A DNA stretch of 64,000 nt from Vitrella brassicaformis CCMP3155. Taxonomy: Eukaryota > Protista > Chromerida. Below are positions 30,475 through 59,741 of the stretch, in pieces. The stretch is taken from NCBI GenBank assembly GCA_001179505.1, contig CDMY01000227.1:614613-678612 (forward strand). The letters run 5' to 3'. The notes beneath the pieces were generated by a model, which was not told the DNA's origin, ran no database searches, and saw only the letters and a list, made by a program, of their open reading frames with translations. A program made the translations under genes and the position numbers. How positions within the stretch are numbered: position 1 is the first letter of the stretch; each line of letters begins with the position of its first letter.

Positions 30475-31351
30475 GCAATTGGCCGGCTCTTGGTGTCGAT
30501 GGGATGGATGGGCGGACACGGACTGGCCGCGGCCTTGGCCGCTGCAACGTGCTTGTTGGTGGCGGGGAGATGGGCGTGTTCGGATGGCTGGTCATTGACT
30601 GCCACGATGGTGTCGCTTGCTTGTGTCTGCTGTATGCCGGTGTGCGATAGCGGAGGGCGGGTCGGTCGGTGGGTGGGTGCGTCATGTCATGAGTCGAGTG
30701 GGTGGGTACTGCGTTGGGTCATGTGACTCACTGATGGACATGTTCGTGTTTGAAAGTGATAGTATCATCGTGAACATATCGGATTCGTTGCTTGATTACT
30801 TCAATGCTCTCACCCCGATGTCGTCCCTGTGTCCTCCCTCTATCCCTCCATTTGTCTGTCCGATTGCAGCAAGCGGTGTCAAGTCAGGCACTCCTCTTTT
30901 TGGGGCACCGCGACTGACAACTGACCGCCAGACAATCACGCGGACACACACCACCCCATCACACAGTCCTCGAAAGGAACTCTCACAGACATGTACCCAC
31001 CGACCGACCCCATCATTCATGCCTCACATGCACTCTCACATCGACCTGATGAGCTCGTCAGTGCACGATGAAATCACCAACAAAGAAAGTGAGCCAGACA
31101 AATATATCGAAGGAGCAAACTATGTGTGTGTGCACGAACTACCCATGGCGTAGCGGCCAGCGCATGGTCACCCCCCACCCCTGCCCACCGCTCCCGGAAC
31201 ACACAACACGCACAGCCAATGAATTCATTCATGTGATGGATAAAGCACATACGCATTCAACATGACACAGCAAAAATCACGAATGGAAACAGCGATTGTG
31301 TGCACGTGTCTGGACGCTACAGAGAGGACTGATGCCGTCCTGTAATCCTAT

Positions 31352-32593
31352 CTACCACATCCAATTCCTGGGGCCTCCGGGGTTCCTGCAGACAGCTGGA
31401 TCGTAGTCATATCCAGTGACGGCCTGAAAAGACATACATACACATCCAAACCCAGCACAGGTGCTCAGTGGGCCTTCGCTGTTTGTCTAGTCGCATGTTC
31501 GCTCGCTTACGATTGCAGTGCACGGGAGGACGTTGTTGTTGCATGTGATCTGCATGAACAGATGATGGAACGCGTGAAAGGCAGGGTATCCGTAGGGGCA
31601 GTGTCTCCTGCACGGCAATGTGGAGACCCGGCGTACGTACCTGGACCCGGTAATTACGGAAGCCGAGGAATGAAAAAGTCCTGACCCAGACATTCGTTGC
31701 CAAAGTCCCCCCGTTCGCCCCGACGCAGTCGTCAGGCAAGGGGCCGGGTCTGCGATGCACATGGACAAATCGTAGCGAATGTGTATCTAGCGTATGGATC
31801 CGTAGTGAGTACCGAATCTCGCAGATTTCCAGACGCATTCCGCCGAGCGACTTCAAATTCCAGTTGTGACGATCGAATGCACCAGGGTTGACTGAGGCTC
31901 TGATGACCCTTGTCTGCCCCGCGCCGACAAGGCCGATGATTTGAGGCCCGTGGATCTCTGCGCACAAGACAGACACACACACAGTGTCCGGTAAATGAAA
32001 CGACAAGATGCCCTTCCCTCGTTCTCGTCGCTTACTGGAGCATGGGAATTGCTCAGAAGTAACATTGGTGCCGTTGTCGGTGACGTTGCTCACAGGCTCA
32101 GAGATACCCTCATACCAGGCAGCTGCATGTGGCCACACACACACGTGTGCGTCTCTCTGTCTCTCCCAGCGTTCGTGTGTGTGTGTGCATCAGTGATCAT
32201 ACGAAGGTTGAGGTCCTTCATCTTGGGGTCATCCTCGTCGCCACCACCGGTCCTGGTCCACACGCGGTCGCCGTGCACAACCACCTCGATGCCCTCCGCG
32301 GCGTTCTCCATGAGCACCGTGGAGATGGCATTGAGTTTTTTCACCCTGTTGGCCTCCTCCGGTGCGACCTCAACCTCCTCCCCATCCTCGCCGATGAACC
32401 TGGGAGCCGCTGCATGAAGAAGCCACGCACAGGGAGAGACGGCACAGAAGGAGAATGCATATCTGTCAAATCTCAAGCGCGGCCACGCGCATGAGGGGAG
32501 TGGCTCACGTTCACGTTCCGCTTGCAGTCTGCGGATCTGGCAGTTGGCGACGCCCGCGAGGGCGATGAGCAGCAGCAGGCAGAAGACCTTCAT
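31352..32593 (-). CDS. Hypothetical secreted protein, multi-exon
   Basis: Clear signal peptide MKVFCLLLLIALAGVANCQ, followed by coding-like exons (APRFIGEDGEEVEVAPEE..., EIHGPQIIGLVGAG...). The 3' end is approximate. Confidence 0.55.
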
Positions 32594-33008
32594 GAGGGGA
32601 GGAGAGATCGGGACAAAGATAAGAAGGACCGCACAAGAGAAGGCAGAGATGCGGGCAGCAGTAGGCAGATGGGAAGCTTCAAAAGGGGGAGAAGTCCGCA
32701 ACGGCGCCTCATCCGCAACGGCGCCGCAACGCAGTCAGACAAGTGGCGTGAGTGCCAGTGCCTGCCCTTCGGGCAGGCAGGCGCGGAAAACAGCAAAAGG
32801 GGATAGAGCAGAGGTGTGGTTTTGTGCGAAGTGTGATTTCCAGAGGTGTGTGAGTTCAGGTGTCGAGAATCGAGGCGGCAGTCTTTCACTGAATCATTGG
32901 GACTTACTCGCTGCACGCCTGTGGCTGTTTTTCTGCCGAGGAACGCCTGTCTCGGCTGTGACTGTGATTCTGAGCTTCGCTAAGATCTCTTGAGATCTGT
33001 TGGCAGTT

Positions 33009-33283
33009 ATGAGTGACCAGAAGAGCCCAGAGAAGGCCGCAAAAGAAGTGGCAGAAGGAGCTGGTGGTGAGGACCTGGAGCAGCTGGCGGCGCTGATCAA
33101 CGACTATGACCGGGCAGTGCGCTGTGATGACCTGGCAGGGGTGAGCGGACCACGGAAGCCGAACACCATTCGGAAGGAGGCAAGTGCTGGTGTGTGAGGT
33201 GTGTGTCCTGCAGGTGTGTCGACTCGCTGAGGAGATCGATAAGGTCCGTCCCTGCATGAACCAGCGCAGCAAGGCGCTGGCCT
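33009..33283 (+). pseudogene. Truncated 5' copy of the gene at 36012-38078, fused to antisense Helitron helicase
   Basis: 32993-33283 is nearly identical to 35996-36286, then switches at ...gctggcct|ccgcgtcttcc... to sequence matching 39937 onward. Confidence 0.85.
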
Positions 33284-35695
33284 CCGCGTCTTCCGCAAGG
33301 AGCGTCTCGTCTGCAGTGGGATCGATGTGGAAGGTGGGGATAAGTCCGTCACCGACCTGCACCACAAAGACAGCGAAGCGAGTCGGTGCGGTCGCTTCCA
33401 TCCCCTTGCCCACCTTGAGACACAGGTCAGAATAAGCTTGGTCGACGATCCGATGGTTGGTCAGCAGCTCGTACCTCTCGAAGCACGGCCAGAGAACGGA
33501 GGACTTGATAGAGGCCTTCCAGGCGTTGATTTCGTTGCTGTCCTCTCCTCGGGGCAGCACGGGAGTCAGCTGGCGGAAGTCGCCTGCGCACACGAACACC
33601 TTGCCGCCGAAGGGCCGGTCAATTCCTGTGATGTCCTGGAGCATGCGGTGTGTGGCCTCGATATTGTTCACGTGGGCCATAGTCACTTCGTCCTGCACAC
33701 ACACACGCATACACACACACACACACCACACACACACACTCCGCACATGCACGTGCTTGTGTGCATTCAGATAGGGCCGATCAGAGGCCTACCAGATGAG
33801 GAGCTGGCTGTGGCGCAGCAGCTCTGCCTTATGAGAGTTACGGCCGACTGTGCACTCCACCGGCTCCTTCGAGATGTTGTCGACTACCTTGATCTTCAAG
33901 GCGCCGTGCGCCGTGTGGCCCCCAGTGTAGTTGAGCGCTGCCAGCGCCGTCGTTGCAGTGGCGATGGCGATGTTGCCTCGCATGCGGACCGCCGACAGCA
34001 GGCACTGCAGCAGCGTGGTTTTCCCGGAACCGGCTGATCACCAGCAAAGACACACACGCATGCACCCCCCGGTCCACACCGCCTGTGTGTCTGCCTGTGT
34101 GTCTGTCCGTCTGTCTGTTTCTCACCCAGTGCGGGCACAATCACCGACATCGGAATCACGCCATCCACTGTCTCGTTGGCCCTCGACGCGTCCGGATAGA
34201 GGTGCTCGAGCACGTCATTGTAGACCCTCAGCTGCTCGGGGTCAGTCTCGAAGAGCGAAAACAACCGATCATGCTCTCGCCGCACGTCGGCGAGGTTCCC
34301 GTAGCTCTGCCGCTCCATGCCTTCGTCAGCAAAGTCCTCAGGCTCAGGCAGGCTGAAGTCCTTGTTGGTCTTGCCTGGGCTCATGGCATCGATGTCCTCA
34401 GAGATGTCGCGCAGCAGCAGCTGGTAGGCCGCGTTCGGGTCGAGCCCTTCGTCCTCCTCGTAGTCACTGACGAGGAAGTCCCGATGCGTCTCGAGGATCT
34501 CCGGAGCGTCGCACTCGTGGTTGACAATCAGCTGGACGAAGAGCAGACGTAGCTGGAACGGTAGCAGGCCGTGGTCCTCGATCGCCTCCAGCAGCAGTGT
34601 CTTCACGAACTCGTCTCCCTGGAGCAGGCCGCTCTCTCTCGCGGCGTCCACGTAATGGTCATACACCTGCCCGTTGATGGTTCGCAGGGCCTGCAGCACG
34701 TCACAGTCAGCAGCAGCCACCAAGAGGAGACATTGGCAGACGCCAGGAATGGAACGATGAATGCGGGAGTTGTTACCTCGTAGGAGCCCCGCGCCTTGGA
34801 CGTCTTGAGCAGCAGACGAAGGTAGTAGGGCTCGCCCTGCGAGACGTTCATGGTCTGCAGCCGCGTGCACACCTTGTGTCCGCTTGCTCGCTCGTAGAAG
34901 ACGTCGCCGTTCTTGGTGCGGAACGAACGGCGGCCCTTCGGCACCGCCTGCCGCTGCTGCTTCATCTGGTATCGCTCGAAGAACTGCTGATACGTCACGT
35001 CATCGAACTCAGGATCGTCAGGCCGCGCCAGCCAGTGCTCTAGCTCGTTGGGCTTGGGCTGGATCACCCGGCCTCGCTCGCTCTGCCTCCCGTACACCAG
35101 CTGCACCAACTTGCGCTTCTCTGGAAGGACCACTGGCAAAGTGATGACCGGCGGCTCGATCACCGTGATCCTGTGGCTCAGGATGCGGTGGCAGGCCTCG
35201 CTGCCGCAGATGACCCGGCCCTCCTGGTACTCGGCGATCTCGTCGCGCGCGGGAGCCGCTCCGCCGTGAGCCCCGCCACTCGCACTCGTGGCCGCCGAGT
35301 CCGCCCCCGCCAGCCTCTCGACGTAGGAGCTCTGCCTCGCCCGCTGCTCGTCTCGCTCCTGCTTGAAGCTGTGCCCCCTTGCGGCTGTGCTCGCCGAGTC
35401 GGTTGCCCACTTGATGGTGAAAGGATTCTTGTGGGGTTTCCACATGTACCGGAACATGTAGATGATCACCTTCATGAACGCAACGACGTCGCAGTACACG
35501 TGGCAGCGCAACAGCGCTAGCAGCACAGGCGAGTAGGACGCGATCCAGCGGTCGAGCACGTCTCGTCGTCGATAGATGCAGCGGCCGTGGACGTTCCAGT
35601 GTGTCTCGTTGCAGAGAGGCCACGGCGCCCCCAACTTGCACGGGGTGCGACATCGGTCCCCCAGCAACATGTACTCTTCCAGGCTCTTCTTGTCG
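33284..35695 (-). pseudogene. Helitron RepHel segment (Rep C-terminal part + helicase N-terminal half), helicase 3'-truncated
   Basis: IIYMFRYMWK, DEIAEYQEGR, GSGKT, DEVTMAH, FGGKVFVCAGDFRQLTPV and LLTNHR are present. Helicase motifs IV-VI are absent because of the junction at 33283/4. Confidence 0.88.
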
Positions 35696-35995
35696 NNNNN
35701 NNNNNNNNNNNNNNNNNNNNNNNNNNNNNNNNNNNNNNNNNNNNNNNNNNNNNNNNNNNNNNNNNNNNNNNNNNNNNNNNNNNNNNNNNNNNNNNNNNNN
35801 NNNNNNNNNNNNNNNNNNNNNNNNNNNNNNNNNNNNNNNNNNNNNNNNNNNNNNNNNNNNNNNNNNNNNNNNNNNNNNNNNNNNNNNNNNNNNNNNNNNN
35901 NNNNNNNNNNNNNNNNNNNNNNNNNNNNNNNNNNNNNNNNNNNNNNNNNNNNNNNNNNNNNNNNNNNNNNNNNNNNNNNNNNNNNNNNNNNNNNN
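35696..35995. other. Assembly gap (300 N)
   Basis: Run of N. Confidence 1.
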
Positions 35996-36011
35996 AGATC
36001 TGTCGGCAGTC

Positions 36012-38078
36012 ATGAGTGACCAGAAGAGCCCAGAGAAGGCCGCAAAAGAAGTGGCAGAAGGAGCTGGTGGTGAGGACCTGGAGCAGCTGGCGGCGCTGAT
36101 CAGCGACTATAACCGGGCAGTGCGCTGTGATGACCTGGCAGGGGTGAGCGGACCACGGAACCCGAACACCATTCGGAGGGAGGCAAGTGCTGGTGTGTGA
36201 GGTGTGTGTCCTGCAGGTGTGTCGACTCGCTGAGGAGATCGATAAGGTCCGTTCCTGCATGAACCAGCGCAGCAAGGCGCTGGCCTGGGCGTCGGAGCGA
36301 GACGCGCAGCTGCTAGGAGAGTTGGCGGCTTCAAGCAGCGCCGTGCGCAAGGGACTACACCAGCAGCGCCTCAAGCGAGTAAGGAGATGGCAGTTAGGGA
36401 GGTGTCTCTCAGTGAGTGGTGAGGGGATGTCACATGTTGGTGGGTGTGTCTGTGTCTCGCTGGCGGTCGCACGCAGCCTGTGCTGAGGCGCCTGCACAGG
36501 CGGCGTCGGACGAGCCCAAGGCCGACTGGGAGCAGACGTACGACGAGATGGAGCGACACTTGAAGGAGGCCGCTGAGCGCCAGCGCAAGAGAGGTACATG
36601 GAGGAGTCGGGAGAGAAGCGAACGGTTCGACACTGCGCACCTCGTTGGCTCTGCTGTGTGCAGGACGCGTTGCTGAGGGGCAGGCTGGGCAGTTCGCAGA
36701 TGACGAGGCAGTTGAAGACGAGGTAGGTGGGGTCTCTCGTGCCTCCTTTCCACACGCATCTATGCGTCTGTGTGTGCAGGAGGAGATGCGACAGGACATC
36801 GGCATCCCCAGCGCATCGCTGCCGGCCGACATCGACGAGTCGGACGAGGCCAAAGCGGTTCGCGATGTGCTGCCCGCCGAGCGTCTGGAGGCCTGCCCTG
36901 CCCCTGTTGTGGTGGTGGACAGAGTGGAGCACGTCAAGAACTCCATGGTGGGGATGTGGGATGGGGGCACGATGGATGCCGTGGTGAGGGCCGTCAACGC
37001 CAAGGACTACAAAGTCGGCGGACAGTACTCCTGCGACAGCTGCGTCATCACACGCCACGTGAGCGCGGGAGCAGGGCAGCTAGGCAGAGAAGCTATCACT
37101 GACGCGTACACCTGTGTTGTGTATCTGTGTATGCGCCTGTGTATGTCTGTGCAGGGCGGCAAGTCTCATCACAGCGCCGAGCGGTGCCCTACGGTCATGT
37201 ACGGCTACCAGCTCCACTTCCCCTTCCCGACCATCGACGGTGTGCTCAAGCGTGTGCTGCTGGCCAAGAGGCGGGCCAAGAACGAGGAGAAGATCACCGC
37301 CGAGGACATCAAGAACATCGCCAGCCACGGCCCGCACGCCAGAGAACACATCTTCCTCAACGCGGCCACCAAGATGAGCGAGATCGACATGACCAAGGCG
37401 TTCAAGATGATTCCCGTCGTGCAGGTAACCAGAGAGAGACAGACACGTACATACAGGGGGAAGGCAGGACGGGCGGGCGGGAGAGGGGCAGGGAGGCGGA
37501 CGGTTTCCTGTCCATTCGCTGATCCTCTGTGTTGTCTGTGGCCGTTCAGGCGTCGGGACAGACGGTGCTGCGCGATAGCGATTCCAACATCGTCTTCTAC
37601 GACCGCAACCACAACGAGACGCAGCGCATCTCGCTCCCCCAGCTGCGTTCGTGGATGGAGAAGAAGAGATTTCTGCGCGCGCGGGTGAGCTGGTCACAAC
37701 ACGTGTGTGTACACACATACGCACAGACCCATGGATGTATGGATTCATGTGGCTGCCTGTCTGCGTGTGTCTGTGTGGCTGTCTGTCTGTCTCTGCGGTC
37801 AGATCGTTGGTGATGCGGACATCGTCGGGCTGCTCAGCCTGTGTCCGCCACGCTGCCATCGCTGCGGCTGCTGGTGCAAGGGGTTCCCCGACGCCTACAC
37901 CCGCAGCCAGTCGGCCAACTTCGGGCTGGCGGGGTACCAGTGCGGCAACAGTACCTCGTTCGGCGGCACGTGCTCGTCGACGCCGCAGCGACCGGAGGAG
38001 AACGTCGCGTCGCTGTGGCTAGACGAGTATGTGGTCGCCCTGCTGGCCTACTTTAAGATCATCCCCTACGAAGAGTAG
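36012..38078 (+). CDS. Unknown protein (~8 exons) with acidic N-terminal half and Cys-rich C-terminus, convergent with Helitron RepHel
   Basis: GT-AG exon chain MSDQKSPEK...CPTVMYGYQLHFPFPTIDGVLKRV...CPPRCHRCGCWCKGFPD...YQCGNSTSFGGTC...IIPYEE*; strong coding bias; no family recognised. Confidence 0.75.
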
Positions 38079-38181
38079 ACAGGGGATGGGGCGGGCGAGG
38101 GCAAGGGGGGGAAGACAAACGTGTTTTTATGTGGGCGCATGCATGCGATGTGTGTGTGTGTGTGTGTGTGATGCGGGTGCT

Positions 38182-38530
38182 CTGAGCTGTGCGTATTTGT
38201 AGTATTCTCTCACACTCTGAGCTGTCCATATTTGTAGTTCTCTCACAGTCACAGCTGTCAGGTCGTCTGTGCGTCAGGGGCTGGTTTCGTGTGTGGTGGT
38301 CACCAACACATCTGGTCACCCACTTTGTCTGTCCATTCAGTGTCCATCGCTGCGCATTTGTCACTGTCTGTGCATACATGAGTGCGTGTGTGTGTGTTCG
38401 TGTGTATGTGTTTGTGTTGGGAAGCAGCTGGCAAACGTGTTTTTCGTGCGAGCGCATGCATATTTGTTTGTTCTGAGCTGTGCATATTTGTTGTTCTCAC
38501 AGTCACAGTCACAGCCGTCAGGTCGTCTGT
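38182..38530. repeat. Three imperfect copies of a ctgagctgtgc(a/g)tatttgt..ttctc(tc)aca motif, two extended by gtcacagc(t/c)gtcaggtcgtctgt
   Basis: Copies start at ~38182, ~38217 and ~38473. Confidence 0.8.
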
Positions 38531-39094
38531 TCACCGACTCTCTGCTATGAATTTGTCAGTGTGTCTATAATGCTTCCATGCCTTTACTCGTGTGTGCATG
38601 TCTGTGTTGCGCGCGTGGGTACATGCATGCGTGCACGTGTCCGAGGTCTGAGAGCTGCGTTTCTTGTCGTTCTCAACGCCTGTCTGGTGCTCTCCGCAAT
38701 CGGCCTTTTCTTATGTGTTCCACACAGCGGATCCATTCATATTCTTGGACGCATCCATTCATTGCATGCTTTCATCGGACAGAGTCGTCTGACCACATCA
38801 ATGTCACCATTCACGTGCAGCGAATCGGCACAGAGCAATCAAAAATAAACCGAACTTTCAACACAGTACGCTCAGCAGGCTCCTTGCAGTGGTGACCTGA
38901 CAGACACACGGAGGCACACACACACACATACAGACACACAATGTGAGAGCACACGCATTCGAGTGGCATGCAGGCGTGTTCGTTTGGCTTGTCCGTTTTC
39001 GGCTTCGATTGGCGTTCGAGTGCTGTTCGCGATTTCGATGTGAGAGAGGCTCCGTCGTTTTCAGCCCCTGGCTGGCTGTCTTGCCCTCACCGAA

Positions 39095-42000
39095 TCACAC
39101 GAGCAGTCTCTTGTGGACGATGTTGCGGCACATGGGCTTCCCGCTCGATGAGACACGGAATCGGGATGTCACGAGCAGGATGTCGACGGTGCGCCGGACG
39201 CGGGTGAGCGCAGTGTACAGGTGGCCGTGTTGAAACAGCTTGCCCCGGATGTCCAGCGCCACACGCTCCAGGGTCTGCCCTTGCGCCTTGTGGACGGTGA
39301 GACTGTAGGCGACCTGAAAGGGACAGACAGAGCACAATGCGGCAACTGAGCGCAATGAAAACGTGCAGCTGACCTTGAGAGGGAACTGGCACCGCACGAA
39401 GCGCTTTCCCAGCGTGCCCTTCCGGTGGACGGGTTGGATGGTGAAGTTGATCCGAGGTAGCACAAACGTCGGATACTTGGGGTCGGGATGGATCTTCCTG
39501 ACCTCGACGAGGTTGGGACCCCTGCTGCCCACATAGATGACCTTCTCGTTGTTGCAGAGCCCGTACCGCTTGGACAGGTTGCGCAGTACGATGCAGAGAG
39601 CGCCGGGCTTCAGGTCGAGCTGGTGCGGTGGCTTTGGCAGCTCGTCTTGGGTGGCCATGTACTCGTCCTCCTGGTCAACCTCACTCTCATCCAGAGGCAG
39701 GTCGTCAGTGGACCCGTCCTTGAGGGGCCGGTTGTGCGCGTAGTGCACATCCTTGTCTCCCTTCATGTCATCGATGATCTGCCTGTTGAAGCGGTCCACG
39801 GCTTCATTGGTCGGGCACAGAATGGCACGCGACGCGCACGCCTCAGGGTCGGTGTCGTAAAGTCGGTTGGGGAAGGCGAACTCGATCGCGTCCCTCGTCT
39901 GCTGCGTGGAGGGCAGGTCCAGCTCGATCCAGTGGTCCGCGTCTTCCGCACGGAGCGTCTCGTCTGCAGTGGGATCGATGCGGAAGGTGGGGATAAGTCC
40001 GTCACCGACCTGCACCACAAAAACAGCGAAGCGTTCTGAGTCGGTGCGGTCACTTCCATCCCCTTGCCCACCTTGAGACACAGGTCAGCATAAGCTTGGT
40101 CGACGATCCGATGGTTGGTCAGCAGCTCGTACCTTTCGAAGCACGGCCAGAGAACGGAGGACTTGATAGAGGCCTTCCAGGCGTTGATCTCGTTGCTGTC
40201 CTCTCCTCGCGGCAGGACGGGAGTCAGCTGGCGGAAGTCGCCTGCACACACGAACACCTTGCCGCCGAAGGGTCGGTCGATTCCTGTGATGTCTTGGAGC
40301 ATGCGGTGTGTAGCCTCGATATTCTTCACGTGGGCCATGGTCACTTCGTCCTGCACACACACACACATACACACACACACACACCACATACACACACTCC
40401 GTAGATACATGTGCTTGTGTGCATTCAGATGGAGCCGATCAGGCCCGACCCAGATGAGCAGCTGGCTGTGGCGCAGCAGCTCTGCCTTATGAGAGTTACG
40501 GCCGACAGTGCACTCCACCGGCTCCTGCGAGATGTTGTCGACCACCTTGATTTTGAAAGCGCCGTGCGCCGTGTGGCCCCCAGTGTAGTTGAGCGCTGCC
40601 AGCGCCGTCGTCGCAGTGGCGATGGCAATGTTGCCTCGCATGCGGACCGCCGCCAGCAGGCACTGCAGCAGTGTGGTTTTCCCGGAACCGGCTGATCACC
40701 AGCAAAGACACACACGCGCACGCACGCATGCACCCCCCGGTCCACGCCGCCTGTGTGTCTGTCCCTGTGTCTGTCTGTCTGTCTGTCTGTTTCTCACCCA
40801 GTGCGGGCACAATCACCGACATCGGAATCACCCCGTCCACTGTCTCGTTGGCCCTCGACGGGTCCGGATAGAGGTATTCGAGCACGTCATTGTAGACCCT
40901 CAGCTGCTCGGGGTCGGTCTCGATGAGCGAAAGCAGCCGATCATGCTCTCGCCGCACGTCGGCGAGGTTCTCGTAGCTCTGCCGCTCCATGCCTTCGTCA
41001 GCAAAATCCTCAGGCTCAGGCAGGCTGAAGTCCTTGTTGGTCTTGCCTGGGCTCACGGCATCGATGTCCTCAGAGATGTCGCGCAGCAGCAGCTGGTAGG
41101 CCGCGTTCGGGTCGAGCCCGTCGTCCTCCTCGTAGTCACAGACGAGGAAGTCCCGATGCGTCTCGAGGATCTCCGGAGCGTCGCACTCGTAGTTGACAAT
41201 CAGTTGGACGAAGAGCAGACGTAGCTGGAACGGTAGCAGGCCGTGGTCCTCGATCGCCTCCAGCAGCAGCGTCTTCACGAACTCGTCTCCCTGGAGCAGG
41301 CCGCTCTCTCTCGCGGCGTTCACGTAATGGTCATACATCTGCCCGTTGATAGTTCGCACAGCCTGCAGCATGTCACAGTCAGCAGCAGGCAGCAAGAGAA
41401 GACATTCGCAGACGCCAGGAATGGAACGATGAATGCGGGAGGAGTTACCTCGTAGGAGCCCCGCGCCTTGGACGTCTTGAGCAGCAGACGAAGGTAGTAG
41501 GGCTCACCCTGCGAGACGTTCATGGTCTGCAGCCGTGTGCACACCTTGTGTCCGCTTGCTCGCTCGAAGAAGACGTCACCGTTCTTGGTGCGAAACGAGC
41601 GCTTCATCTGATATCGCTCGAAGAACTGCTGATACGTCACGTCGTCGAACTCAGGATCGTCAGGCCGCGCCAGCCAGTGCTCCAGCTCGTTGGGCTTCGG
41701 CTGGATTACCCGCCCCTGCTCGCTCTGCCTGCCATACACGAGCTGCACCAACTTCCGCTTCTCTGGCAGGACCACCGGCAGAGTGATGACCGGCGGCTCG
41801 ATCACCGTGATCCTGTGGCTCAGGATGCGGTGGCAGGCCTCGCTGCCGCAGATGACCCGACCCTCCTGGTACTCGGCGATCTCGTCGCGCGCGGGAGCCG
41901 CTCGGCCGTGAGCCCCGCCACTCGCACTCGCACCCGCTGAGTCCGCCCCCGCCAGCCTCTCGATATAGGAGCTCTGCCTCGCCCGCTGCTCGTCTCGTTG

Positions 42001-42917
42001 CTGCTTGGAGCTGTGGCCCCTTGCGGCTGTCGGCGCCGAGTCGGTCGCCATCTTGATGGTGAAGGGGTTCTTGTGGGGTTTCCACATGTACCGGAACATG
42101 TAGATGATCACCTTCATGAACGCTACGACGTCGCAGTGCACGTGGCAGCGCAACAGCGCCAACAGCACAGGCGAGTAGGACGCGATCCAGCGGTCAAGCA
42201 CGTCTCGTCGTCGGAAGATGCAGCGGCCGTGGACGTTCCAGTGTGTCTCGTTGCAGAGAGGCCACGGCGCCCCCAACTTGCACAGGGTGCGGCACCGGTC
42301 GCCCAGCAGTTTGTACTCATCCAGACTCTCCTTGTTGGGGCGGCAGTACGGCCCGCATCGATGGCACATGAACTTGAGCACCAGCTCCTTCAGGAAGGGG
42401 TTGTTTCGCGGCACCTCGGCCGAAATGTACCGGTCGATGACGGCGGGGTCGGTGAAGTCAAGTTCAGTCTTCGGGCTCACGTGGGAGTGAGTGATCCCTC
42501 GCTGCTGGTACTCCATCACCGACAGCAGGTACACGAGCTTGCCGAACTCGCCCGCTCTCAGGCGTGAAAGCAGCGCCTTCTGCTTCTCGTAGAACACGCG
42601 AGATGAGATGTCGGGACGGTCATAGGCGGTCTGGCCTGCAAACGCACACAGAGGCACCCGCATCACACACATACACACACACACACACACAGATGTATGT
42701 ATGTATGCGTATATATGCATCTACACACCGCTCCTGTGCGTACATGCGTACCTGGCTCGATAGCGTTGACGATCTCGTCCCACTTGTCGTTGCACGTCAT
42801 CGTGATGAACAGAGACGGCTTGCCGAACTTGCCCGCTAGCGCCAGGGCGTCGCGGAGACTCCACCGAAAGTAGCGAGGCCCACCCAGGAAGCTGCCAGGC
42901 ATGTAGATATAGCCGGC
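39095..42917 (-). CDS. Helitron RepHel, copy A: Rep HUH domain to complete PIF1 helicase C-terminus; 5' end lost in gap; intron-containing
   Basis: KPSLFITMTCN, EYQQRGITHSH (HUH), IYMFRYMWK (catalytic Tyr motif), GSGKT, DEVTM, GDFRQL, ILCPTN, LRNL..GLCN, RCQFPLK-VAYSLTVHKAQGQTL, HGHLYTALTRV. Confidence 0.93.
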
Positions 42918-43217
42918 NNNNNNNNNNNNNNNNNNNNNNNNNNNNNNNNNNNNNNNNNNNNNNNNNNNNNNNNNNNNNNNNNNNNNNNNNNNNNNNNNNN
43001 NNNNNNNNNNNNNNNNNNNNNNNNNNNNNNNNNNNNNNNNNNNNNNNNNNNNNNNNNNNNNNNNNNNNNNNNNNNNNNNNNNNNNNNNNNNNNNNNNNNN
43101 NNNNNNNNNNNNNNNNNNNNNNNNNNNNNNNNNNNNNNNNNNNNNNNNNNNNNNNNNNNNNNNNNNNNNNNNNNNNNNNNNNNNNNNNNNNNNNNNNNNN
43201 NNNNNNNNNNNNNNNNN
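42918..43217. other. Assembly gap (300 N)
   Basis: Run of N. Confidence 1.
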
Positions 43218-46200
43218 GGCAGACGCCAGGAATGGAACGATGAATGCGGGAGTTGTTACCTCGTAGGAGCCCCGCGCCTTGGACGTCTTGAGCAGCAGAC
43301 GAAGGTAGTAGGGCTCGCCCTGCGAGACGTTCATGGTCTGCAGCCGCGTGCACACCTTGTGTCCGCTTGCTCGCTCGTAGAAGACGTCGCCGTTCTTGGT
43401 GCGGAACGAACGGCGGCCCTTCGGCACCGCCTGCCGCTGCTGCTTCATCTGGTATCGCTCGAAGAACTGCTGATACGTCACGTCATCGAACTCAGGATCG
43501 TCAGGCCGCGCCAGCCAGTGCTCTAGCTCGTTGGGCTTGGGCTGGATCACCCGGCCTCGCTCGCTCTGCCTCCCGTACACCAGCTGCACCAACTTGCGCT
43601 TCTCTGGAAGGACCACTGGCAAAGTGATGACCGGCGGCTCGATCACCGTGATCCTGTGGCTCAGGATGCGGTGGCAGGCCTCGCTGCCGCAGATGACCCG
43701 GCCCTCCTGGTACTCGGCGATCTCGTCGCGCGCGGGAGCCGCTCCGCCGTGAGCCCCGCCACTCGCACTCGTGGCCGCCGAGTCCGCCCCCGCCAGCCTC
43801 TCGACGTAGGAGCTCTGCCTCGCCCGCTGCTCGTCTCGCTCCTGCTTGAAGCTGTGCCCCCTTGCGGCTGTGCTCGCCGAGTCGGTTGCCCACTTGATGG
43901 TGAAAGGATTCTTGTGGGGTTTCCACATGTACCGGAACATGTAGATGATCACCTTCATGAACGCAACGACGTCGCAGTACACGTGGCAGCGCAACAGCGC
44001 TAGCAGCACAGGCGAGTAGGACGCGATCCAGCGGTCGAGCACGTCTCGTCGTCGATAGATGCAGCGGCCGTGGACGTTCCAGTGTGTCTCGTTGCAGAGA
44101 GGCCACGGCGCCCCCAACTTGCACGGGGTGCGACATCGGTCCCCCAGCAACATGTACTCTTCCAGGCTCTTCTTGTCGGGGCGGCAGTACGGCCCGCATC
44201 GGTGGCGCATGAACTTGAGCACCACCTCCTTCAGGAAGGGGTTGTTTCGCGGCACCTCGGCCGAGATGTACCGGTCGATGACGGCGGGGTCGGTGAAGTC
44301 AAGCTCAGTCTTGGGACTCACGTGTGAGTGAGTGATCCCTCGCTGCTGGTACTCCATCACCGACAGCAGGTACACGAGCTTGCCGAACTCCCCCGCTCGC
44401 AGGCGTGAAAGCAGCGCCTTTTGCTTCTCACAGAACACGCGAGATGAGACGTCGGGACGGTCATAAGCGGTCTGGCCTGCAAACGCACACAGAGGCACCC
44501 ACATCACACACACGCACATGTATACGTACACATCCGCGTAGCCGCCGTTCCTGTGTGTCCACACGTACCTGGCTCAATCGCGTTGACGATCTCGTCCCAC
44601 TTGTCGTTGCACGTCATCGTGATGAACAGAGACGGCTTGCCGAACTTGCCCGCTAGCGCCAGGGCGTCGCGCAGACGCCACCGAAAGTAGCGAGGCCCGC
44701 CCAGGAAGCTGCCAGGCATGTAGATATAGCCGGCCTTGGGCTGCGACTCGAAGTCGATCCCCTCGGCGGCGAGCTCCTCCTGCAGCTGCCGCGTCAGGGG
44801 ATGCTGCTGCCTCTCCAGCTCAGACAGCGTGCAGAGCCGCAGCTGGTGCCGACGGTGGTACTGCAGCCGCTCGTCCTCCATTCGCGCGCACAGATCGATC
44901 AGGTACTCCTGGCCGAGGCGGGGCATGAGGTGCACCAGGGGCTCGTTGAGCAGCCGCTGACGTGCATAGCGCATCGAGGTCCAGTACTTCTCGCTGGGCT
45001 TCAGCTCGCCGCTCGTGATGTCCTCCTCGCGAAAGGCCCGGGTGTAGAAACGTCGGTTGATAACCTGGCCGAGCTCCACGTCGTCGAAGTAGTCGTTACC
45101 CGTCCTGCCGCCACACACAGCACACCGACACGACCATTCACCCAGTCACCCAACCAATCGAACCCTCCGCCTTCCCGCCGCTCCCCACCTACCTGGACGA
45201 CAGAGGCATCGACGGACACCAGCCCAGCCACCCCTTCTGGAAGATGAGCGGGTACTGCAGCGACTCGCAGGCCGGGCTCTTGCAGTCGACGAAGTCTTCG
45301 TCGTGGCCAGTGGTGGTCCGTTTGTACGGACGGATGCACACGAGCCGCTCACACGGATCATAGGCAGGGGAGTCCGGCAGCAGCACGCAGACCTCGTCTG
45401 GACGTGGCCTGTACTGGAACTCCAGGACGACCTGACAGCCCTCCGCTTGCGCAATCTCCCCGAACATGCGCAGCTGCCGAACGAACGGGTTCTCCTTGAG
45501 CAGCATCAGATGCAGCCGATCGACCAGCTGCTGGACCATCAACACCCGCTGACTCCTCCCCTTTGTCGCCCCCTCCACTCCGGCTATCGTCTTGATGCGC
45601 TTCGTGCGCTCCTCGTCCGCCCGGGGAGTCTCATAGACCATCCACACCAAAGGCTGCTCTTCCGCCGACAGCACGCGGTGGTACACGCGTCCACACATCT
45701 GCACCTCACTGAAGCCCGCAGGAAACGACAGGGCCACGCTGGAGCGCGCGTGAAAGCCCATCGCCGTCATCGAGAACGTGTTGTTGTACCACCGGCTGTT
45801 CTTCCGCAGCTCAGGCCCAAAGGTGGGGTCCGACATGAGCGCCTTGAAGTCGTTCGCCCACGGCAGAGGCTCAAGCACTGCCCGGCCACCTTCACAGCAG
45901 AATGAGCTCCCCTCGCTCTTCCACACCCACGCCTTGCAATGCTGGCATTGCACTCAAGGACCGAGGGAAAGCTGTTTCGGGAAGGTGCGCGAGGGGTCCA
46001 GCAGGGGCTGGTTACATTTCCAGCTGTCTGCACCACCACAGCACACGATCACAGTGGCATGTGCCGTTGTCTCGCCGCTACCTGGGTAGTGAGCCTCCAT
46101 GAAGAGCCGCTTCTGGTCCAGCAAGGCGAGGAACGCACCACGGACCGCCGCAGCACGGAATCCCTTCTGACTTGGCACTGCCACGGTGCCCAACGCTCCC

Positions 46201-46748
46201 GTGAAGGGCCGTAGCCAGTGCTTTTCCACTCTTCGATCCGGAAGCACCAGCTCGAGCATGAACCAGTACCCCTCGCTCTTCCCCTTTACGGTCCATCTCA
46301 TTGAGCACAGCTCACAGGAGAACCCGTCGCTCCAGCAGTTCTCTGCCATGCGTACGTCGGGATACAGGAGCTCGCTCCGGATGAGGCCCTCAGCCAGCCG
46401 CTTCGTCTCTCTTTCGTCCAGCTGGGCCCCGCTACCCTCCTGCAGCGCAGCGATCGGCGACTGCCCGGTGAGTCTGGCGAACGAGACCTCGTAAGCTCCT
46501 CTCGCAGCCTCAAACGCCGAGTGTACGTCTGCCCGCTGCGGCTGAGCGGCTCGGAACACCCTCGCTGGACCACCCGCCCTCACACAGAACGCGCCCGCCT
46601 CCCGATCCCATAGGAGTGTCGCCACACCCGCGTTCATCTTCACCATCGCCTTGTACTCATACACGAGTGCTTGCGCAAATAGATGGACAGACACGGAACA
46701 GGTCTCGACACGACCTACCCAGCAACCATGAGCACACACATCGTTCAT
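43218..46748 (-). CDS. Helitron RepHel, copy B: N-terminal extension, Zn-finger and Rep domain; in-frame TGA at 45954-45956
   Basis: CQHC...FCC..G Zn finger, YNNTFSMTAMG, GRVYHR, ENPFVRQL, LQYPLIF, EYLIDLCARMEDERL, MPGSFLGGPRY, FITMTCN and HUH motif. The N-terminus probably extends across the gap to ~47500. Confidence 0.88.
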
Positions 46749-46951
46749 GCACGCATGCCCTAGCCACCATCTCGCCCCTTCTCTCTTTCCACACCTGGCT
46801 CATCGGGCGACGTATCCATCTTGGCTGCCTCGGCGCCACTCTCGACCGACATGGCTGGGTGCGTCTCCTTCCCTTCACCGTCGCTCGTCGTGCTGCTCTG
46901 TCCCATGCCCGACGTGCTCGGCTCGTCGCTCCCCCCGCCAACCGTCACGCC

Positions 46952-47251
46952 NNNNNNNNNNNNNNNNNNNNNNNNNNNNNNNNNNNNNNNNNNNNNNNNN
47001 NNNNNNNNNNNNNNNNNNNNNNNNNNNNNNNNNNNNNNNNNNNNNNNNNNNNNNNNNNNNNNNNNNNNNNNNNNNNNNNNNNNNNNNNNNNNNNNNNNNN
47101 NNNNNNNNNNNNNNNNNNNNNNNNNNNNNNNNNNNNNNNNNNNNNNNNNNNNNNNNNNNNNNNNNNNNNNNNNNNNNNNNNNNNNNNNNNNNNNNNNNNN
47201 NNNNNNNNNNNNNNNNNNNNNNNNNNNNNNNNNNNNNNNNNNNNNNNNNNN
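46952..47251. other. Assembly gap (300 N)
   Basis: Run of N. Confidence 1.
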
Positions 47252-47856
47252 AGCCTGTTCCTGTCTCCCGGGAAGAAGACTCGCACCTGCGGCCGCCTCA
47301 ACACCCCCTCGACGGACAAACGCAGCTGCCGCGAAGCTCTCGTCTCGACCTCCTCCGCCTCCTCGTCCGCCTCTCCACGTGTCCTCTTCACACCCGAAGA
47401 CACACACGTAACCACGCGCACACAGATGCAACAGAACTCCGAACCACCCTTCCCTTCGATTGCCAGAGTCACTGAACGCGCAGCCCTCGCCACGTTCCCG
47501 ATTTCGAGTCCGATTGCACCCCAGAGCAGCGTTCAGTGTCAACGCAACGCTACGGCTCACCTCTCGTCGATTGCTTCACCATCTTCTCCACACAGTCACC
47601 ACACACTTTTACGCATGCCCTAAGGCTCACCAAACGTTTTCCTTTTTCCCTCCTTTTGTTTGACTGCTGACAACATGCGAACGGCATCAGAAGCGAGAGC
47701 ATCCTGTCTAGTTTTGCTTAACGAAAACAGCTCTCGCATGCGCTGCCTACACGCATCGGAATTCCACTGGGAAAAAACCCCGGTTTCAAAATTCATATAG
47801 GGGATGATCACTTTTGGGAAACTGCGCGCCAATTTGAATTCTCCCGCTCACTGTCG

Positions 47857-49403
47857 ATGCTCTTGACCGGCCGCCTATCCCTTCTCCGTCTGCAGCTGGC
47901 CGCTCTCCCCATCTGCCAGAGCCTCGCATCTGCCCATCTCGCATCGATCTTCCGCCACTTTCACACATCATCGTCAACAGCTGAGTCGGTCACCATGGGC
48001 ATGCGCTGCGAGTGGACGCGCATAGGGGAGGGTGAGGGCAAGCCCAGCAGCCGCAGCTCCCACTCCGTCAACATCAACAACAACAACGTCTATCTGTTCG
48101 GCGGCGAGTCCGCCCCAAGAACACCCATAGACAGCAAGATCCACGTGTATGACCTCAAGAGCGACACCTGGACGACTCCCGTGACCCTCAACGAACCCCC
48201 ATCCGCGCGTCTCGCGCACGGGGCGGCATTCGCGAACGGCAAGCTGTACGTGTTCGGAGGGCAGACGTCAGTGGCGGCGAGCGTGGACATCGAAGACAAG
48301 GACAAGCGCGAGGAGGCCACACTCAACGACCTGTTCGTCTTCGACCCGGAGACCAGCACCTGGACTGAGGTGGGCATGGGCAACAGCAACAGACGGCACA
48401 CCGTCCACACAGACACACACATATTGCCATGGTTCTTTCTCCCTGTCTGTGTGCTGGTGTGTAGCTGACCAGCCAGACGCACGGCCCAACCCCCGAGCGC
48501 CGCAGCTACCACACCATGACAAGCTACAGCAACAAGATCTACCTATTTGGCGGAGTCGGAGTCAACGGACGGCTGAATGATCTGCACGAGTTCGACCCCG
48601 CGACCCTCACGTGGCGACAGCTGGCGTCACCTGACAGCGACAAGTGCCCTGGTGGGCGAGGCAAAGAATGGGTGGGGTGAGAGTGATGTGCTTGCATGTG
48701 TGTGTGTGTGTATGTGTGTGTGCGCGTATGACAGGGAGAGGCGGCTCGGCGGTTGTGGCCTACAAGGGGAAGCTGTACGTCGTCAACGGCTTCGCAGGTA
48801 GGTGCCTGAGACTGAGCAGGAAGGCGGCACGGCACAGGTCATCCACTTGCATCTGCAACCCTTCTCTTCTTTTTCCATCAGGCCACGAGAGGAATGATGT
48901 GCATGAGTACGACATCGGCAGCAACACGTGGCGGCAGACCGAGTGGACGGGCGACAACCCACCCAGAAGCGTCTCGGCTGTCGTCGTCGCTGGCGGCGGT
49001 ATCATCACCATGGGCGGCGAGGCCGACCCATCAAAACTGGGACACGCAGGTACAGATCACACCACAAGCAAGACACCTCCTCAGCACACATACGCAGACA
49101 GACGGCTCATGCATCTCCCTCCTCTGTGCAGGTGCGGGCAAGTTCACCGATGCCGTGTTCCATTTTTCTCCGCGTACGAACCACTGGACCCGCCTGCTGT
49201 GCGAGGGGGTCGGCAATGGCAAGATGCCGATGCCCCGTGGCTGGCACACGGGGGCAGCACTCAGCGACGGCTCGGGGCTGGTGATTTTTGGTGGCGTCGA
49301 TACCGACAACGCCCGCCTGGATGATTTTTGGAAACTGACTCTGGTGATATCTGCGTCAGAGCCAGTGGAGTCGGGCGGGCAGGTCAGACGCAATTACGAC
49401 TGA
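47857..49403 (+). CDS. Kelch beta-propeller protein resembling plant nitrile-specifier protein 5, with possible organellar leader; multi-exon
   Basis: PSSRSSHSV..NVYLFGGE, RSYHTM..IYLFGGV..GRLNDLH, GRGGSAVVAY..LYVVNGFAG-HERNDVH, RSVSA..MGGEADP..HAG-AGKF and PRGW follow the NSP5 motif order. Confidence 0.85.
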
Positions 49404-50534
49404 GTGGCAGGCAGACAAGAGGCAGGTCCGTGGGCTATGTGGGCTGCTATGCTAAGCGGTCGGGTGGTTTGAAGGATGGGTGGATGCATGTGTGTGCGCT
49501 GTTCCGTGCCTTCAGAAGTTGCTGTGCTGGTGCAGCGCAGCGGTGCATGTTTTTCGGTTGCGGGTCGTCTTTATCGACTCTGCTCACGTACCTCTGCTGT
49601 ACGTCTGTCTGTCTGTCTGGATGGGCCATGGGCGTCTTCTATCGCACCACGGCGGTGCTTCGTGATTTGTGTGTCGTTTTGGTCTGCGTCTGCCATCGAG
49701 TCGGATGCCTCACGGGCGGTTGACGGCTGATGAACCAGCTGTCGTCCAGATGACTTTTTGGCCATCCGACCCATGGCTGATGGACGCAGACCAAAGACAC
49801 ACTATGTGTATCACACACACAAGGATGATCCTGTCTTCTGTCGGCTGCTGATTGGTGGTTGGAGTATGATGCGGTTGTGCATCCGCAGGGCGTGTGTATG
49901 TTCCAACTACTCGGATGGGCTATTCGCTGATGAGCCACGGGCAGGAAGCCGACACTTCACTGCTCGTATCTCTTGAGGGTCTGGCGCATCAGGATGGTTG
50001 GAACAGCACCATATCAATGAGAGACGTTGAGACTCGCCAGCCGAGATGATCCGTCAATCCATCAGCAGCACCGAATGACTTGATCCATATGACCGCACGA
50101 CACAAAGGGCACCAGTCACACGTCACACCGCATCACTATCAATCTGTCTCATGGAAAAAAGACACGGCATCCGTCATTGTGGTGTACACATGGCATGCAC
50201 GCACAAATGACCGCACCAACGCAGCGCCACCCCACAAATACACCACGACCCACTCTCGCAAAAAAGAGTACCCACCAGAGCACAACCTGTACTTGTGTGC
50301 CAATGCAGCCAGCAGACAGCTACAGCCAAGGCATGGCCATGTCTGCAGGGCTATCTGCAGAGACCTCACGGATTTCAAACCGCAGCTCACCACAGCACTC
50401 GCTCCACCCATCAGGCCTCACCACAGCAGCCAGCTGCCCAGCGATATTAACACAGATAGATAAGGCAGCCAACTGAACACCCGCCACTCGCCTCCACCCT
50501 CGCCGCCTGCAGCACATCAGCACCGTCCCTTCCC

Positions 50535-54800: not shown

Positions 54801-55199
54801 CGCACCGTGGGAACTCTCCTCCAGCTCGCTCTCATCCTTTGCGTCCGAAAGAGGAAAGGTAGGCAACGGAAGGGATGGCGCAGGAGCGGCCGTCATGTGT
54901 GTGTGTGTGTGTGTGTGTGTACAGGTGGCGGTCCTCTTGCGCCTGATCGATTCGAGGATGCGATCGAACAAAACGGTGTGGGCAAGATCATGGCCGCTGC
55001 CCCTCTGCCGATGCAGTCGCTTCGTCGTCTACTGCTGGATGCCGCCGTCCGCGACAAGGTGGCCAACCCATTGCGCATGGACTACAGAACAGTGATGTCC
55101 TCCGGACCGGAAGTTGCGACTGCTCTACTAACGCCAGCGATGGCAATGATAGGTCCGTCAGTCAGTCAGTAGATCTTCCAGAGTCCCTCAACCACGTGT

Positions 55200-55232
<33 letters not shown>

Positions 55233-59608: not shown

Positions 59609-59741
59609 CCGAGCGTCAGATCTCCGCTTCCCTCTCACCTTGGCCCCGTGGATGATCGCACATTGGGGCCCCGCAATCTTAGCGAGCATCTGCTGATCTC
59701 TCTCTCTGTGGCTTGGCGGCGACATCAGGTTGTTGTCCAGG

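What the first reader, a model, noticed from the sequence alone, without database searches (positions are those of the whole stretch)
32993..44734. Composite Helitron unit: an unknown gene travels with RepHel in two diverged copies
Contig A (35996-42917) reads [unknown gene +][repeats][RepHel -]. The flanking contigs (32993-35695, continuing as 43218-44734) read the same unit from the same starting point, with scattered substitutions in both genes. Because both copies carry the unknown gene in the same position and orientation, the gene appears to be part of the duplicated unit: captured cargo or a dedicated accessory gene of a new Helitron family. The alternative is two haplotypes of one locus.
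Basis: partly seen in the sequence, partly recalled or inferred. Interest (0 to 1): 0.8.

Follow-up and report, generated by a model that had tools for sequence, protein, structure and literature searches.

The report
Helitron transposon with orphan accessory gene
A roughly 10.5-kb rolling-circle transposon (Helitron) in the alga Vitrella brassicaformis carries, besides its transposase, a second gene of unknown function that also sits beside the transposase of a distantly related Helitron, so it looks like a long-kept accessory gene; this is a modest new twist on a known theme.

Summary
Contig c3 (35996-42917) does read [8-exon orphan gene +][repeats][RepHel -].

- **Second copy:** the c2/c4 copy keeps only the first 298 bp of the gene. 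A 3,642-bp deletion removes the rest of it and the RepHel 3' end.
- **Assembly:** neither N gap is continuous. c2 and c4 overlap by 961 bp at 100% identity, so c3 is a redundant contig placed between them.
- **Real unit:** a Helitron spanning window 32740-47807, minus sense. It has a 5' TC, a 3' hairpin, a CTTG end, A/T flanks, no TIR and no TSD. About 30 short (about 250-290 bp) non-autonomous copies or fragments exist genome-wide.
- **Gene is internal:** long copies on C571 and C320 have different flanks.
- **The protein:** P0001 (468 aa, CEL95483.1) has no Pfam domain. A scan of 1.84 billion proteins found only Vitrella-type relatives.
- **Conservation:** its Cys-rich C-terminal domain recurs next to a diverged RepHel (49-54% aa in the helicase C-terminal block) on scaffold C200, in the same convergent layout, where it is transcribed and spliced.
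- **Not alleles:** RepHel in copies A and B differs by dS 0.205 with dN/dS 0.13.

Verdict: a lineage-conserved Helitron accessory gene. Its function is unknown; a zinc-ribbon DNA binder is only a lead. The scan had already noted this gene on this same window (s1-248814).

The parts
32740..47807 (-). Whole Helitron as laid out in the window. It includes the interloper contig c3 and three N spacers. The real c5/c4/c2 copy is about 6.3 kb of read sequence plus the c4|c5 gap. A full-length element is inferred to be about 10.5 kb.
   Evidence: Homology to other genomic copies begins and ends at these positions. Termini were aligned across 10+ copies.
47790..47807 (-). 5' terminus, TCATCCCCTATATGAATT on the minus strand. 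The host base before it is A in 10 of 10 copies.
32740..32779 (-). 3' terminus: hairpin at 32759-32779 (about 8-9 bp GC-rich stem, short GAA(G) loop) followed by ...CACTTG. The host base after it is T in 12 of 13 copies. The hairpin lies 10 nt from the end in short copies and about 20 nt in long copies.
36012..38078 (+). Orphan accessory gene. Its 8 exons are 36012-36143, 36217-36378, 36500-36594, 36664-36723, 36780-37058, 37155-37424, 37550-37684 and 37803-38075, followed by TAG. All introns are GT-AG. The product is the annotated 468-aa protein P0001 / CEL95483.1.
37803..38075 (+). Exon 8, the conserved Cys-rich C-terminal domain. Motif: RCxxC..W.KGFP..Y...G.AG.QCGN..S..GG.C...E.N...W.D.Y..A.LA....P.
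38079..39094 (.). Spacer between the two convergent genes. It holds TG microsatellites and degenerate direct repeats of about 260-320 bp.
39095..42917 (-). RepHel of copy A on contig c3, from mid Rep domain to the stop codon. HUH (THSH) at 42492-42478, YxxxY at 42102-42079, Walker A (GSGKT) at 40689-40675, plus PIF1, Pif1_2B and UvrD_C_2 domains.
33291..35695 (-). RepHel of copy B on contig c2, Rep to mid helicase. The C-terminal ~280 codons are lost to the deletion.
43218..46799 (-). RepHel of copy B on contig c4. 43218-44178 duplicates c2 34735-35695 exactly. It holds the N-terminal exons: a CxxC...CC block at 45953-45192, Helitron_like_N at 45145-44507, and HUH at 44333-44319.
32993..33290 (+). 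Stub of the orphan gene in copy B: exon 1 at 33009-33140 and the start of exon 2. The deletion junction is at about 33283-33290.
46763..47575 (-). Edges of an OTU-like protease coding block upstream of RepHel. Its core (PGDGDCFFHS ... THFDYL) falls in the N gap 46952-47251. It can be read in the C571 copy at L040:4301-5365.
35696..35995 (.). N spacer joining non-adjacent sequence: c2 ends in the Rep domain, while c3 starts 255 bp inside the element's 3' end.
42918..43217 (.). N spacer joining non-adjacent sequence: the last 1.5 kb of c3 is homologous to the first 1.5 kb of c4.

Best explanation
**The element (shown).** The window holds an autonomous-type Helitron of Vitrella brassicaformis at 32740-47807, with its sense on the minus strand. 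The assembly of this region is scrambled. Contigs c2 and c4 overlap and form one copy (B), which carries a 3.6-kb internal deletion. Contig c3 comes from another, more complete copy (A) and was scaffolded into the middle of B.

**Gene content (shown).** The full element is inferred to be about 10.5 kb. On its sense strand it encodes an OTU-like protease block and a multi-exon RepHel transposase. Between the RepHel stop codon and the 3' hairpin terminus, on the opposite strand, lies an 8-exon gene for a 468-aa orphan protein. The two genes are convergent.

**What the orphan gene is (inferred).** It is an integral, long-retained accessory gene of this Helitron lineage. It is neither an adjacent host gene nor a very recent capture.

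**How it may work (weakly inferred, about 25%).** The protein has a helical N-terminus and a conserved four-cysteine C-terminal domain. It may act as a zinc-ribbon nucleic-acid binder that serves the single-stranded DNA stage of rolling-circle transposition. That is the role usually assigned to the RPA-like genes found downstream of RepHel in other canonical Helitrons.
For: **Boundaries and mobility**
- Both termini are shared by 10 or more aligned short derivatives of 247-285 bp with unrelated flanks. About 30 genomic matches exist.
- The 5' end is TC with a flanking A in 10 of 10 copies. The 3' end has a hairpin plus CACTTG with a flanking T in 12 of 13. There is no TIR and no TSD.

**RepHel**
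- Helitron_like_N, PIF1, Pif1_2B and UvrD_C_2 domains are present.
- The only significant PDB match is Helraiser 7LCC, E=1e-20.
- HUH, YxxxY and Walker A motifs are present in both copies.

**The gene lies inside the element**
- The 3' terminus sits 270 bp beyond the ATG in C227, C571 and C320, each with a different flank.
- There are four distinct versions of the exon-1 region.

**The gene model is real**
- All introns are GT-AG and frame-consistent, and the model equals the annotated 468-aa protein.

**Conservation across lineages**
- C200 has a P0001-like C-terminal block at 161260-161615 (+), 33-42% aa identity. It lies 1.26 kb from a convergent RepHel whose helicase C-terminal block is 49-54% aa identical, with other segments 34-55%.
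- The C200 gene (P0005) is matched by a spliced MMETSP transcript.
- An environmental relative, L061, has the same layout. It keeps 87 of 94 residues (93%) while its spacer DNA is only 76-86% identical.

**No host source found**
- phmmer over 1.84 billion representatives found only P0002 and P0003.

**A and B are not alleles or a neutral duplicate**
- In the Rep exon, dS is 0.205 and dN is 0.027, giving dN/dS 0.13.
Against: - Between the two closest copies (c3 and C571), the orphan gene shows 8 non-synonymous differences out of 11 coding differences. That gives no sign of constraint, though the power is low.
- Only the C-terminal ~90-230 residues are detectably conserved outside the family. 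The C200 gene is annotated as just 112 aa.
- Domain copies on C703, C742, C938 and C509 have no detected RepHel beside them, and I could not fetch their context.
- Other Helitron families in this genome (C326, C366, C219 and others) show no such domain.
- No fully assembled intact copy exists, because c3 lacks both termini.
- The function rests on a cysteine pattern and on atlas scores of 0.75-0.81, which shuffled sequences often reach. Both AlphaFold runs failed, with pLDDT 37 and 42.
- The 3' end reads CTTG, not the canonical CTRR, and no empty site was found.
Confidence: 0.7

Rival explanations
1. Captured cargo. A host gene or gene fragment was picked up by an ancestral Helitron and is carried passively, with no role in transposition.
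For: - Helitrons commonly capture genes, and 20 'stably included' domains are on record (PMC11417382).
- dN/dS between c3 and C571 is close to 1.
- The N-terminal ~230-370 residues are not conserved in the C200 and C703 types.
- Solo domain copies occur without RepHel.
- Other Vitrella Helitron families lack the domain.
Against: - No donor gene was found in this genome or among 1.84 billion proteins.
- The position and orientation are the same in a lineage whose RepHel is only about half identical.
- The C200/L061 pair keeps 93% aa identity against 76-86% nt identity in the spacer.
- The C200-type gene is transcribed and spliced.
Confidence: 0.2
2. Two haplotypes of one locus. c3 and c2/c4 are alleles, one carrying a 3.6-kb deletion.
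For: - c3 has no flanks of its own.
- The scaffolder placed c3 inside the other copy.
- c3 is colinear with c2/c4 apart from one indel.
Against: - Synonymous divergence is 0.205 with dN/dS 0.13 in RepHel.
- Nucleotide divergence is 7-10% overall.
- c3's 3' part is closer to copies on other scaffolds (C571 97.6-99.6%, C320 98.2%) than to c2 (97%).
- c3's ends differ from c2/c4 within 8-15 bp of the contig tips.
- The vegetative cells are presumed haploid. This is my own assumption, from the organism's relatedness to apicomplexans, and was not tested.
Confidence: 0.07
3. A host gene next to a Helitron insertion, copied together with it by segmental duplication.
For: Sequence beyond the finding's limits is also duplicated on C571.
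Against: - That extra sequence ends exactly at the Helitron termini, and the flanks beyond them differ at C227, C571 and C320.
- Short derivatives carry the same two termini.
Confidence: 0.03

Closest known systems
Canonical Helitron (Helitron1 / HLE1), such as Helraiser
   Same: RepHel has a HUH/Y2 Rep domain fused to a PIF1-type helicase, and Helraiser is its only solved-structure match. The element has a 5' TC, a subterminal 3' hairpin and A...T flanking bases. It has no TIR and no TSD. Short non-autonomous derivatives share both ends.
   Different: The 3' end reads CTTG, not CTRR. An OTU-like block lies upstream of RepHel, which HELIANO reports for some HLE1. The gene is intron-rich. A convergent orphan gene sits between RepHel and the 3' end.
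RPA-like accessory genes of Helitrons (plant Helitrons such as the Mothra family, PMC4683698; HELIANO, PMC11417382)
   Same: It is a second gene carried stably downstream of RepHel in HLE1-type elements. A single-stranded DNA-binding role is plausible here too.
   Different: There is no RPA or OB-fold signature (Pfam, PDB and atlas all negative). The protein is an orphan with a four-cysteine C-terminal domain. Its orientation is convergent. Homology to RPA is not supported.
GRF-type and topoisomerase-type zinc ribbons (PF06839, PF23549, PF01396)
   Same: Both are small four-cysteine modules. The nearest atlas clusters, by features and by the atlas's own model, are of these types. GRF domains bind ssDNA (PMC9561275).
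   Different: No HMM match was found. The spacing after the fourth cysteine differs from GRF. The atlas scores lie in the range reached by shuffled sequences. This is a lead only.
Helentron / Helitron2 (HLE2)
   Same: Both have RepHel, and an OTU domain may be present.
   Different: No terminal inverted repeats, no T-T target site and no AP-endonuclease domain. It is not a member.

Membership tests
Canonical Helitron (HLE1) | RepHel: HUH/two-tyrosine Rep domain (Helitron_like_N) fused to a PIF1-family helicase | tested here: met
   Pfam PF14214, PF05970, PF21530 and PF13538. Helraiser 7LCC at E=1e-20. THSH, YxxxY and GSGKT motifs located.
Canonical Helitron (HLE1) | 5' end begins with TC | tested here: met
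   TCATCCCC... at the point where flanks diverge, in 10 of 10 copies.
Canonical Helitron (HLE1) | [quoted passage not shown] | tested here: met
   GCCTGCCC-GAAG-GGCAGGC lies 10 nt (short copies) or about 20 nt (long copies) from the end. DNA fold gives -13.2 kcal/mol, z = -2.4.
Canonical Helitron (HLE1) | 3' end terminates in CTRR | tested here: not met
   The end reads CTTG in all copies. Without an empty site, a boundary shift of 1-2 nt cannot be excluded. I therefore file it as a variant of the HLE1 type, not a textbook member.
Canonical Helitron (HLE1) | Insertion between host A and T, with no target-site duplication and no TIR | tested here: inconclusive
   Flanking A in 10 of 10 and T in 12 of 13; TSD 0; TIR 4-8 matches of 30. 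The flanks also show G at -2 and C at +2, so a GA^TC preference or a 2-nt boundary shift is possible. No empty site was found.
Helentron / HLE2 | 12-18 nt terminal inverted repeats, T-T target, often an AP endonuclease | tested here: not met
   No TIR, A/T flanks, and no Exo_endo_phos hit in any block scanned.
RPA-like Helitron accessory protein | RPA70-type OB fold or Rep_fac-A_C domain | tested here: not met
   Pfam at E up to 10 shows none. PDB phmmer shows none. The exhaustive search finds no RPA relatives.
GRF-type zinc ribbon | Four zinc-binding cysteines with the GRxF[YW]xC ... CxFFxW signature, matched by PF06839 or PF23549 | tested here: inconclusive
   Four invariant cysteines, CxxC ... 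C-x10-C. No Pfam match. Atlas feature scores are 0.75-0.81 and TM is 0.41-0.55 on a low-confidence model. AlphaFold pLDDT is 42.
OTU cysteine protease (5' block of the element) | Catalytic Cys motif (DGxC) and His motif, colinear, matched by the OTU profile | tested here: inconclusive
   PGDGDCFFHS and THFDYL align colinearly to nairovirus OTU domains at E=0.005. Pfam finds no family at E<=0.1.

The most novel reading that the evidence does not exclude
P0001-type proteins define a previously unrecognised class of Helitron accessory factor. They would be zinc-ribbon, single-stranded DNA or hairpin-binding proteins encoded antisense at the 3' end. Chromerid Helitrons would need them for rolling-circle transposition, in place of the RPA-like genes of other Helitrons.
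Probability: 0.2. Interest if true: 0.6.

Novelty: new variant of a known kind. Interest (0 to 1): 0.4.

Why it matters
Helitrons are known to carry extra genes (RPA, OTU, EN and others), but whether these serve transposition is unresolved. This case offers a conserved, transcribed extra gene with no known domain, in a fixed position in two diverged Helitron lineages of an alga related to apicomplexan parasites. It is a tractable candidate for asking what a rolling-circle transposon needs besides RepHel. The held literature has nothing on chromerid Helitrons.

There is also a practical point. The locus is mis-scaffolded: a redundant contig sits inside another copy, and two contigs overlap. Gene models that cross these gaps should not be trusted.

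Tried and rejected
- **Pfam on the orphan gene.** I scanned each exon and the whole of P0001 at E up to 10. Only noise came back.
- **PDB sequence search with P0001.** Nothing was found.
- **ESM atlas on the whole protein.** No usable hit. On the C-terminal domain alone it gave weak zinc-ribbon leads, which I kept only as leads.
- **AlphaFold2.** The full protein with 4 sequences gave pLDDT 37. The C-terminal domain with 3 sequences gave pLDDT 42. Both models were unusable, so I ran no fold searches.
- **Empty site.** The paralogous region on C698 shares neither the last ~140 bp before the insertion nor the ~4.1 kb after it.
- **C326 Helitron.** I found no P0001-like domain in the 1.45 kb I hold upstream of its RepHel stop. 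This is inconclusive.
- **C509.** It holds only an isolated 270-bp fragment.
- **The look-up of encoding contigs.** P0001 and P0002 are not on record.
- **L061 as an independent lineage.** Rejected. It is 80-89% identical to the C200 element, so it counts only as a diverged copy of that lineage.
- **Context of C200 upstream, C703, C742 and C938.** I did not try to get around that limit.
- **Joined exon models.** I built and submitted none. RepHel and the OTU block were searched piecewise by reference. For the orphan gene I used the database protein P0001 as the search returned it.
Full report
**Organism and assembly.** The window is G000:C227:614613-678612 of a 72.7-Mb, 1064-scaffold genome. 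The names attached to the encoded proteins identify it as Vitrella brassicaformis CCMP3155. The window consists of five contigs joined by 300-N spacers: c1 1-11312, c2 11613-35695, c3 35996-42917, c4 43218-46951 and c5 47252-64000.

**Gap test.** Self-BLAST gives four key matches:
- c2 34735-35695 is 100% identical to c4 43218-44178 (961 bp), so c2 and c4 overlap and form one sequence.
- c3 35996-36293 matches c2 32993-33290 at 97%.
- c3 39936-42335 matches c2 33283-35693 at 92.7%.
- c3 41408-42917 matches c4 43219-44734 at 90%.

Neither gap inside the finding is therefore continuous. c3 is a redundant contig of another copy, placed between two overlapping contigs. ORFs that run across the gaps are artefacts.

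**What the second copy lacks.** Copy B (c2/c4) is colinear with copy A (c3) except that it lacks c3 36294-39935 (3,642 bp). The junction shows about 5 bp of microhomology. The c3 ORF 39095-40081 reads straight through the right breakpoint, so B carries a deletion and A does not carry an insertion. The deletion removes most of the 'unknown gene', the spacer and the last ~280 codons of RepHel.

**True unit and its ends.** Searching the flanks against the genome shows that homology to other copies starts at about 32738 and ends at about 47809. Scaffolds C267, C153 and others carry the two ends only about 50 bp apart. Aligning ten such elements (247-285 bp) fixes the termini. On the RepHel-sense (minus) strand:
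- The element begins TCATCCCCTATATG at window 47807, with the host base A in 10 of 10 copies.
- It ends with a perfect hairpin (GCCTGCCC-GAAG-GGCAGGC) followed by ...CACTTG at window 32740, with the host base T in 12 of 13 copies.
- There is no TIR and no TSD. The hairpin folds at -13.2 kcal/mol, z = -2.4.
- About 30 copies or fragments of the short element exist genome-wide.

By the criteria summarised in HELIANO (PMC11417382), this is the HLE1, canonical Helitron pattern, except that the 3' end is CTTG and not CTRR. The flanks also show G at -2 and C at +2, so a GA^TC preference or a 2-nt boundary shift remains possible. I found no empty site.

**RepHel.**
- Pfam finds Helitron_like_N, PIF1, Pif1_2B and UvrD_C_2 on the minus strand.
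- The only significant solved-structure match is Helraiser 7LCC, E=1e-20.
- HUH (THSH), YxxxY and Walker A (GSGKT) are present in both copies.
- N-terminal exons extend to about 46800, outside the finding's limits.
- The c4|c5 gap is bridged in a C571 contig by 616 bp that encode PGDGDCFFHS ... THFDYL. These motifs align colinearly to nairovirus OTU domains at E=0.005, with no Pfam hit. This is an OTU-like protease block upstream of RepHel.
- Summing the segments gives an inferred full length of about 10.5 kb.

**Copies.**
- C571:43967-52242 is a third long copy with its own 3' flank and a different internal deletion (window 37531 to 44402).
- C320:1-498 is a fourth 3' end, again with its own flank. 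It differs from c3 (98.2%), from C571 (96.3%) and from c2 (93.2%).
- C115 is a further fragment of the 5' part.

In C227, C571 and C320, the 3' terminus lies 270 bp beyond the orphan gene's ATG. The gene is therefore inside the element.

**Alleles or not.** In the 420-codon Rep exon, A and B differ by dS 0.205 and dN 0.027, giving dN/dS 0.13. That synonymous distance is not expected between alleles, and the low ratio is not what a neutrally decaying duplicate would show. A and B look like products of two transposase lineages that diverged under selection. Because c3 has no flanks, its chromosomal position remains unknown.

**The orphan gene.** Open blocks with canonical GT-AG borders give an 8-exon, 468-codon model. 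The model is identical to the annotated protein P0001 (CEL95483.1). The C571 copy is annotated as the truncated P0002.
- No Pfam family was found, no PDB relative and no whole-protein atlas hit.
- An exhaustive phmmer scan of 1.84 billion representatives found only P0002 and the 89-aa P0003.

**Conservation beyond the family.**
- P0003 lies on a 2,970-bp ENA metagenome contig, L061. That contig reads [P0001-like C-terminus +, 1380-1718][about 880 bp of tandem repeats][RepHel C-terminus -, 2809-2603].
- L061 is 80-89% identical to scaffold C200 of this genome, so it belongs to the C200 lineage and is not independent of it.
- C200 has the domain at 161260-161615 (+). Its RepHel lies on the minus strand from 162876 to 167153. 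The helicase C-terminal block is 49-54% aa identical to the window's, and the other RepHel segments are 34-55% identical. The accessory domain is 33-42% identical, which is a similar degree of divergence.
- The C200 gene (P0005) clusters at 90% identity or more with an MMETSP transcript ORF, P0004. That ORF lacks the intron that P0003 reads through, so the gene is transcribed and spliced.
- L061 and C200 share 87 of 94 residues, while the adjacent spacer is only 76-86% identical. This suggests constraint on the protein.
- A domain profile finds further short copies on C703, C509, C742 and C938, with stop codons in the C703, C742 and C938 matches and no detected RepHel nearby.

**Against.**
- c3 and C571 differ at 11 coding sites, of which 8 are non-synonymous. 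Among recent copies there is no sign of constraint, though the power is low.
- The N-terminal half is not detectably conserved in C200.
- Other Vitrella Helitron families lack the domain.

**Function.** The conserved domain has four invariant cysteines (CxxC ... C-x10-C). Atlas neighbours of this domain are GRF-type and topoisomerase-type zinc ribbons, with feature scores of 0.75-0.81 and TM of 0.41-0.55 on a poor model. Such modules bind ssDNA (PMC9561275). The scores are within the range reached by shuffled sequences, and both AlphaFold runs failed. The ssDNA-binder reading is therefore a hypothesis held at about 25%.

**Comparison and novelty.** Stable extra genes in Helitrons are well known: RPA downstream of RepHel in HLE1, OTU, EN and 17 further domains (PMC11417382). 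The held literature has nothing on Helitrons in Vitrella. Earlier scan notes record the same orphan gene on this window (s1-248814). They also record other RepHel types in this genome, including one fused to OTU. This is a new variant of a known kind: an HLE1-type family with a CTTG end, an OTU-like block, and a conserved convergent orphan gene.

**Method note.** I submitted no joined exon models. RepHel and the OTU block were searched piecewise by reference, and P0001 was used as the database returned it.

Noticed in passing
window 46952-47251 (N gap); L040:4301-5365 (+): The element's 5' coding block contains an OTU-like cysteine protease core (PGDGDCFFHS ... THFDYL). It falls entirely in the window's c4|c5 gap. 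The best PDB matches are nairovirus OTU domains at E=0.005, and Pfam finds no hit.
   Followed up: partly
L045-L055 (C267, C153, C757, C740, C674, C710, C221, C655, C138, C435, C288): A family of short non-autonomous Helitron derivatives (247-285 bp where both ends could be measured) carries the same two termini. About 30 copies or fragments exist genome-wide, each with different flanks.
   Followed up: yes
window 34735-35695 vs 43218-44178; C571:41000-51000 (L040): Scaffolding redundancy: c2 and c4 overlap by 961 bp at 100% identity, with c3 wedged between them. C571 shows the same pattern, with small contigs between N gaps that duplicate their neighbours at 94-100% identity. C115 1-628 is identical to one of these small contigs.
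   Followed up: partly
window 32759-32740 vs the short copies: The distance from hairpin to 3' end is about 20 nt in the long copies (C227, C571, C320) but 10 nt in most short derivatives. Some copies carry a partial duplication of the hairpin arm.
   Followed up: no
L016 (C200:161737-162600) and L061:1722-2400: The spacer between the accessory gene and RepHel in the C200-type element is a tandem array with a period of about 83 bp. The window's spacer (38079-39094) instead has degenerate repeats of 260-320 bp plus TG microsatellites.
   Followed up: no
window 51790-55000, 50495-50914 and 59212-59631: Just beyond the Helitron lies a multi-copy gene family. Ten or more copies at 71-79% identity occur on C698, C601, C580 and C566. 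A 420-bp direct repeat at 97.9% identity occurs within c5.
   Followed up: no
window 30968-32600: The sequence to the left of the Helitron has an 81% identical paralogue at C698:112241-113897. The C698 region does not provide a clean empty site.
   Followed up: partly
G000 scaffolds C366, C219, C326, C347, C239, C314 and C541: Several other Helitron_like_N or RepHel loci exist in this genome, some with in-frame stops. None shows the P0001-type domain at the sensitivity used.
   Followed up: partly
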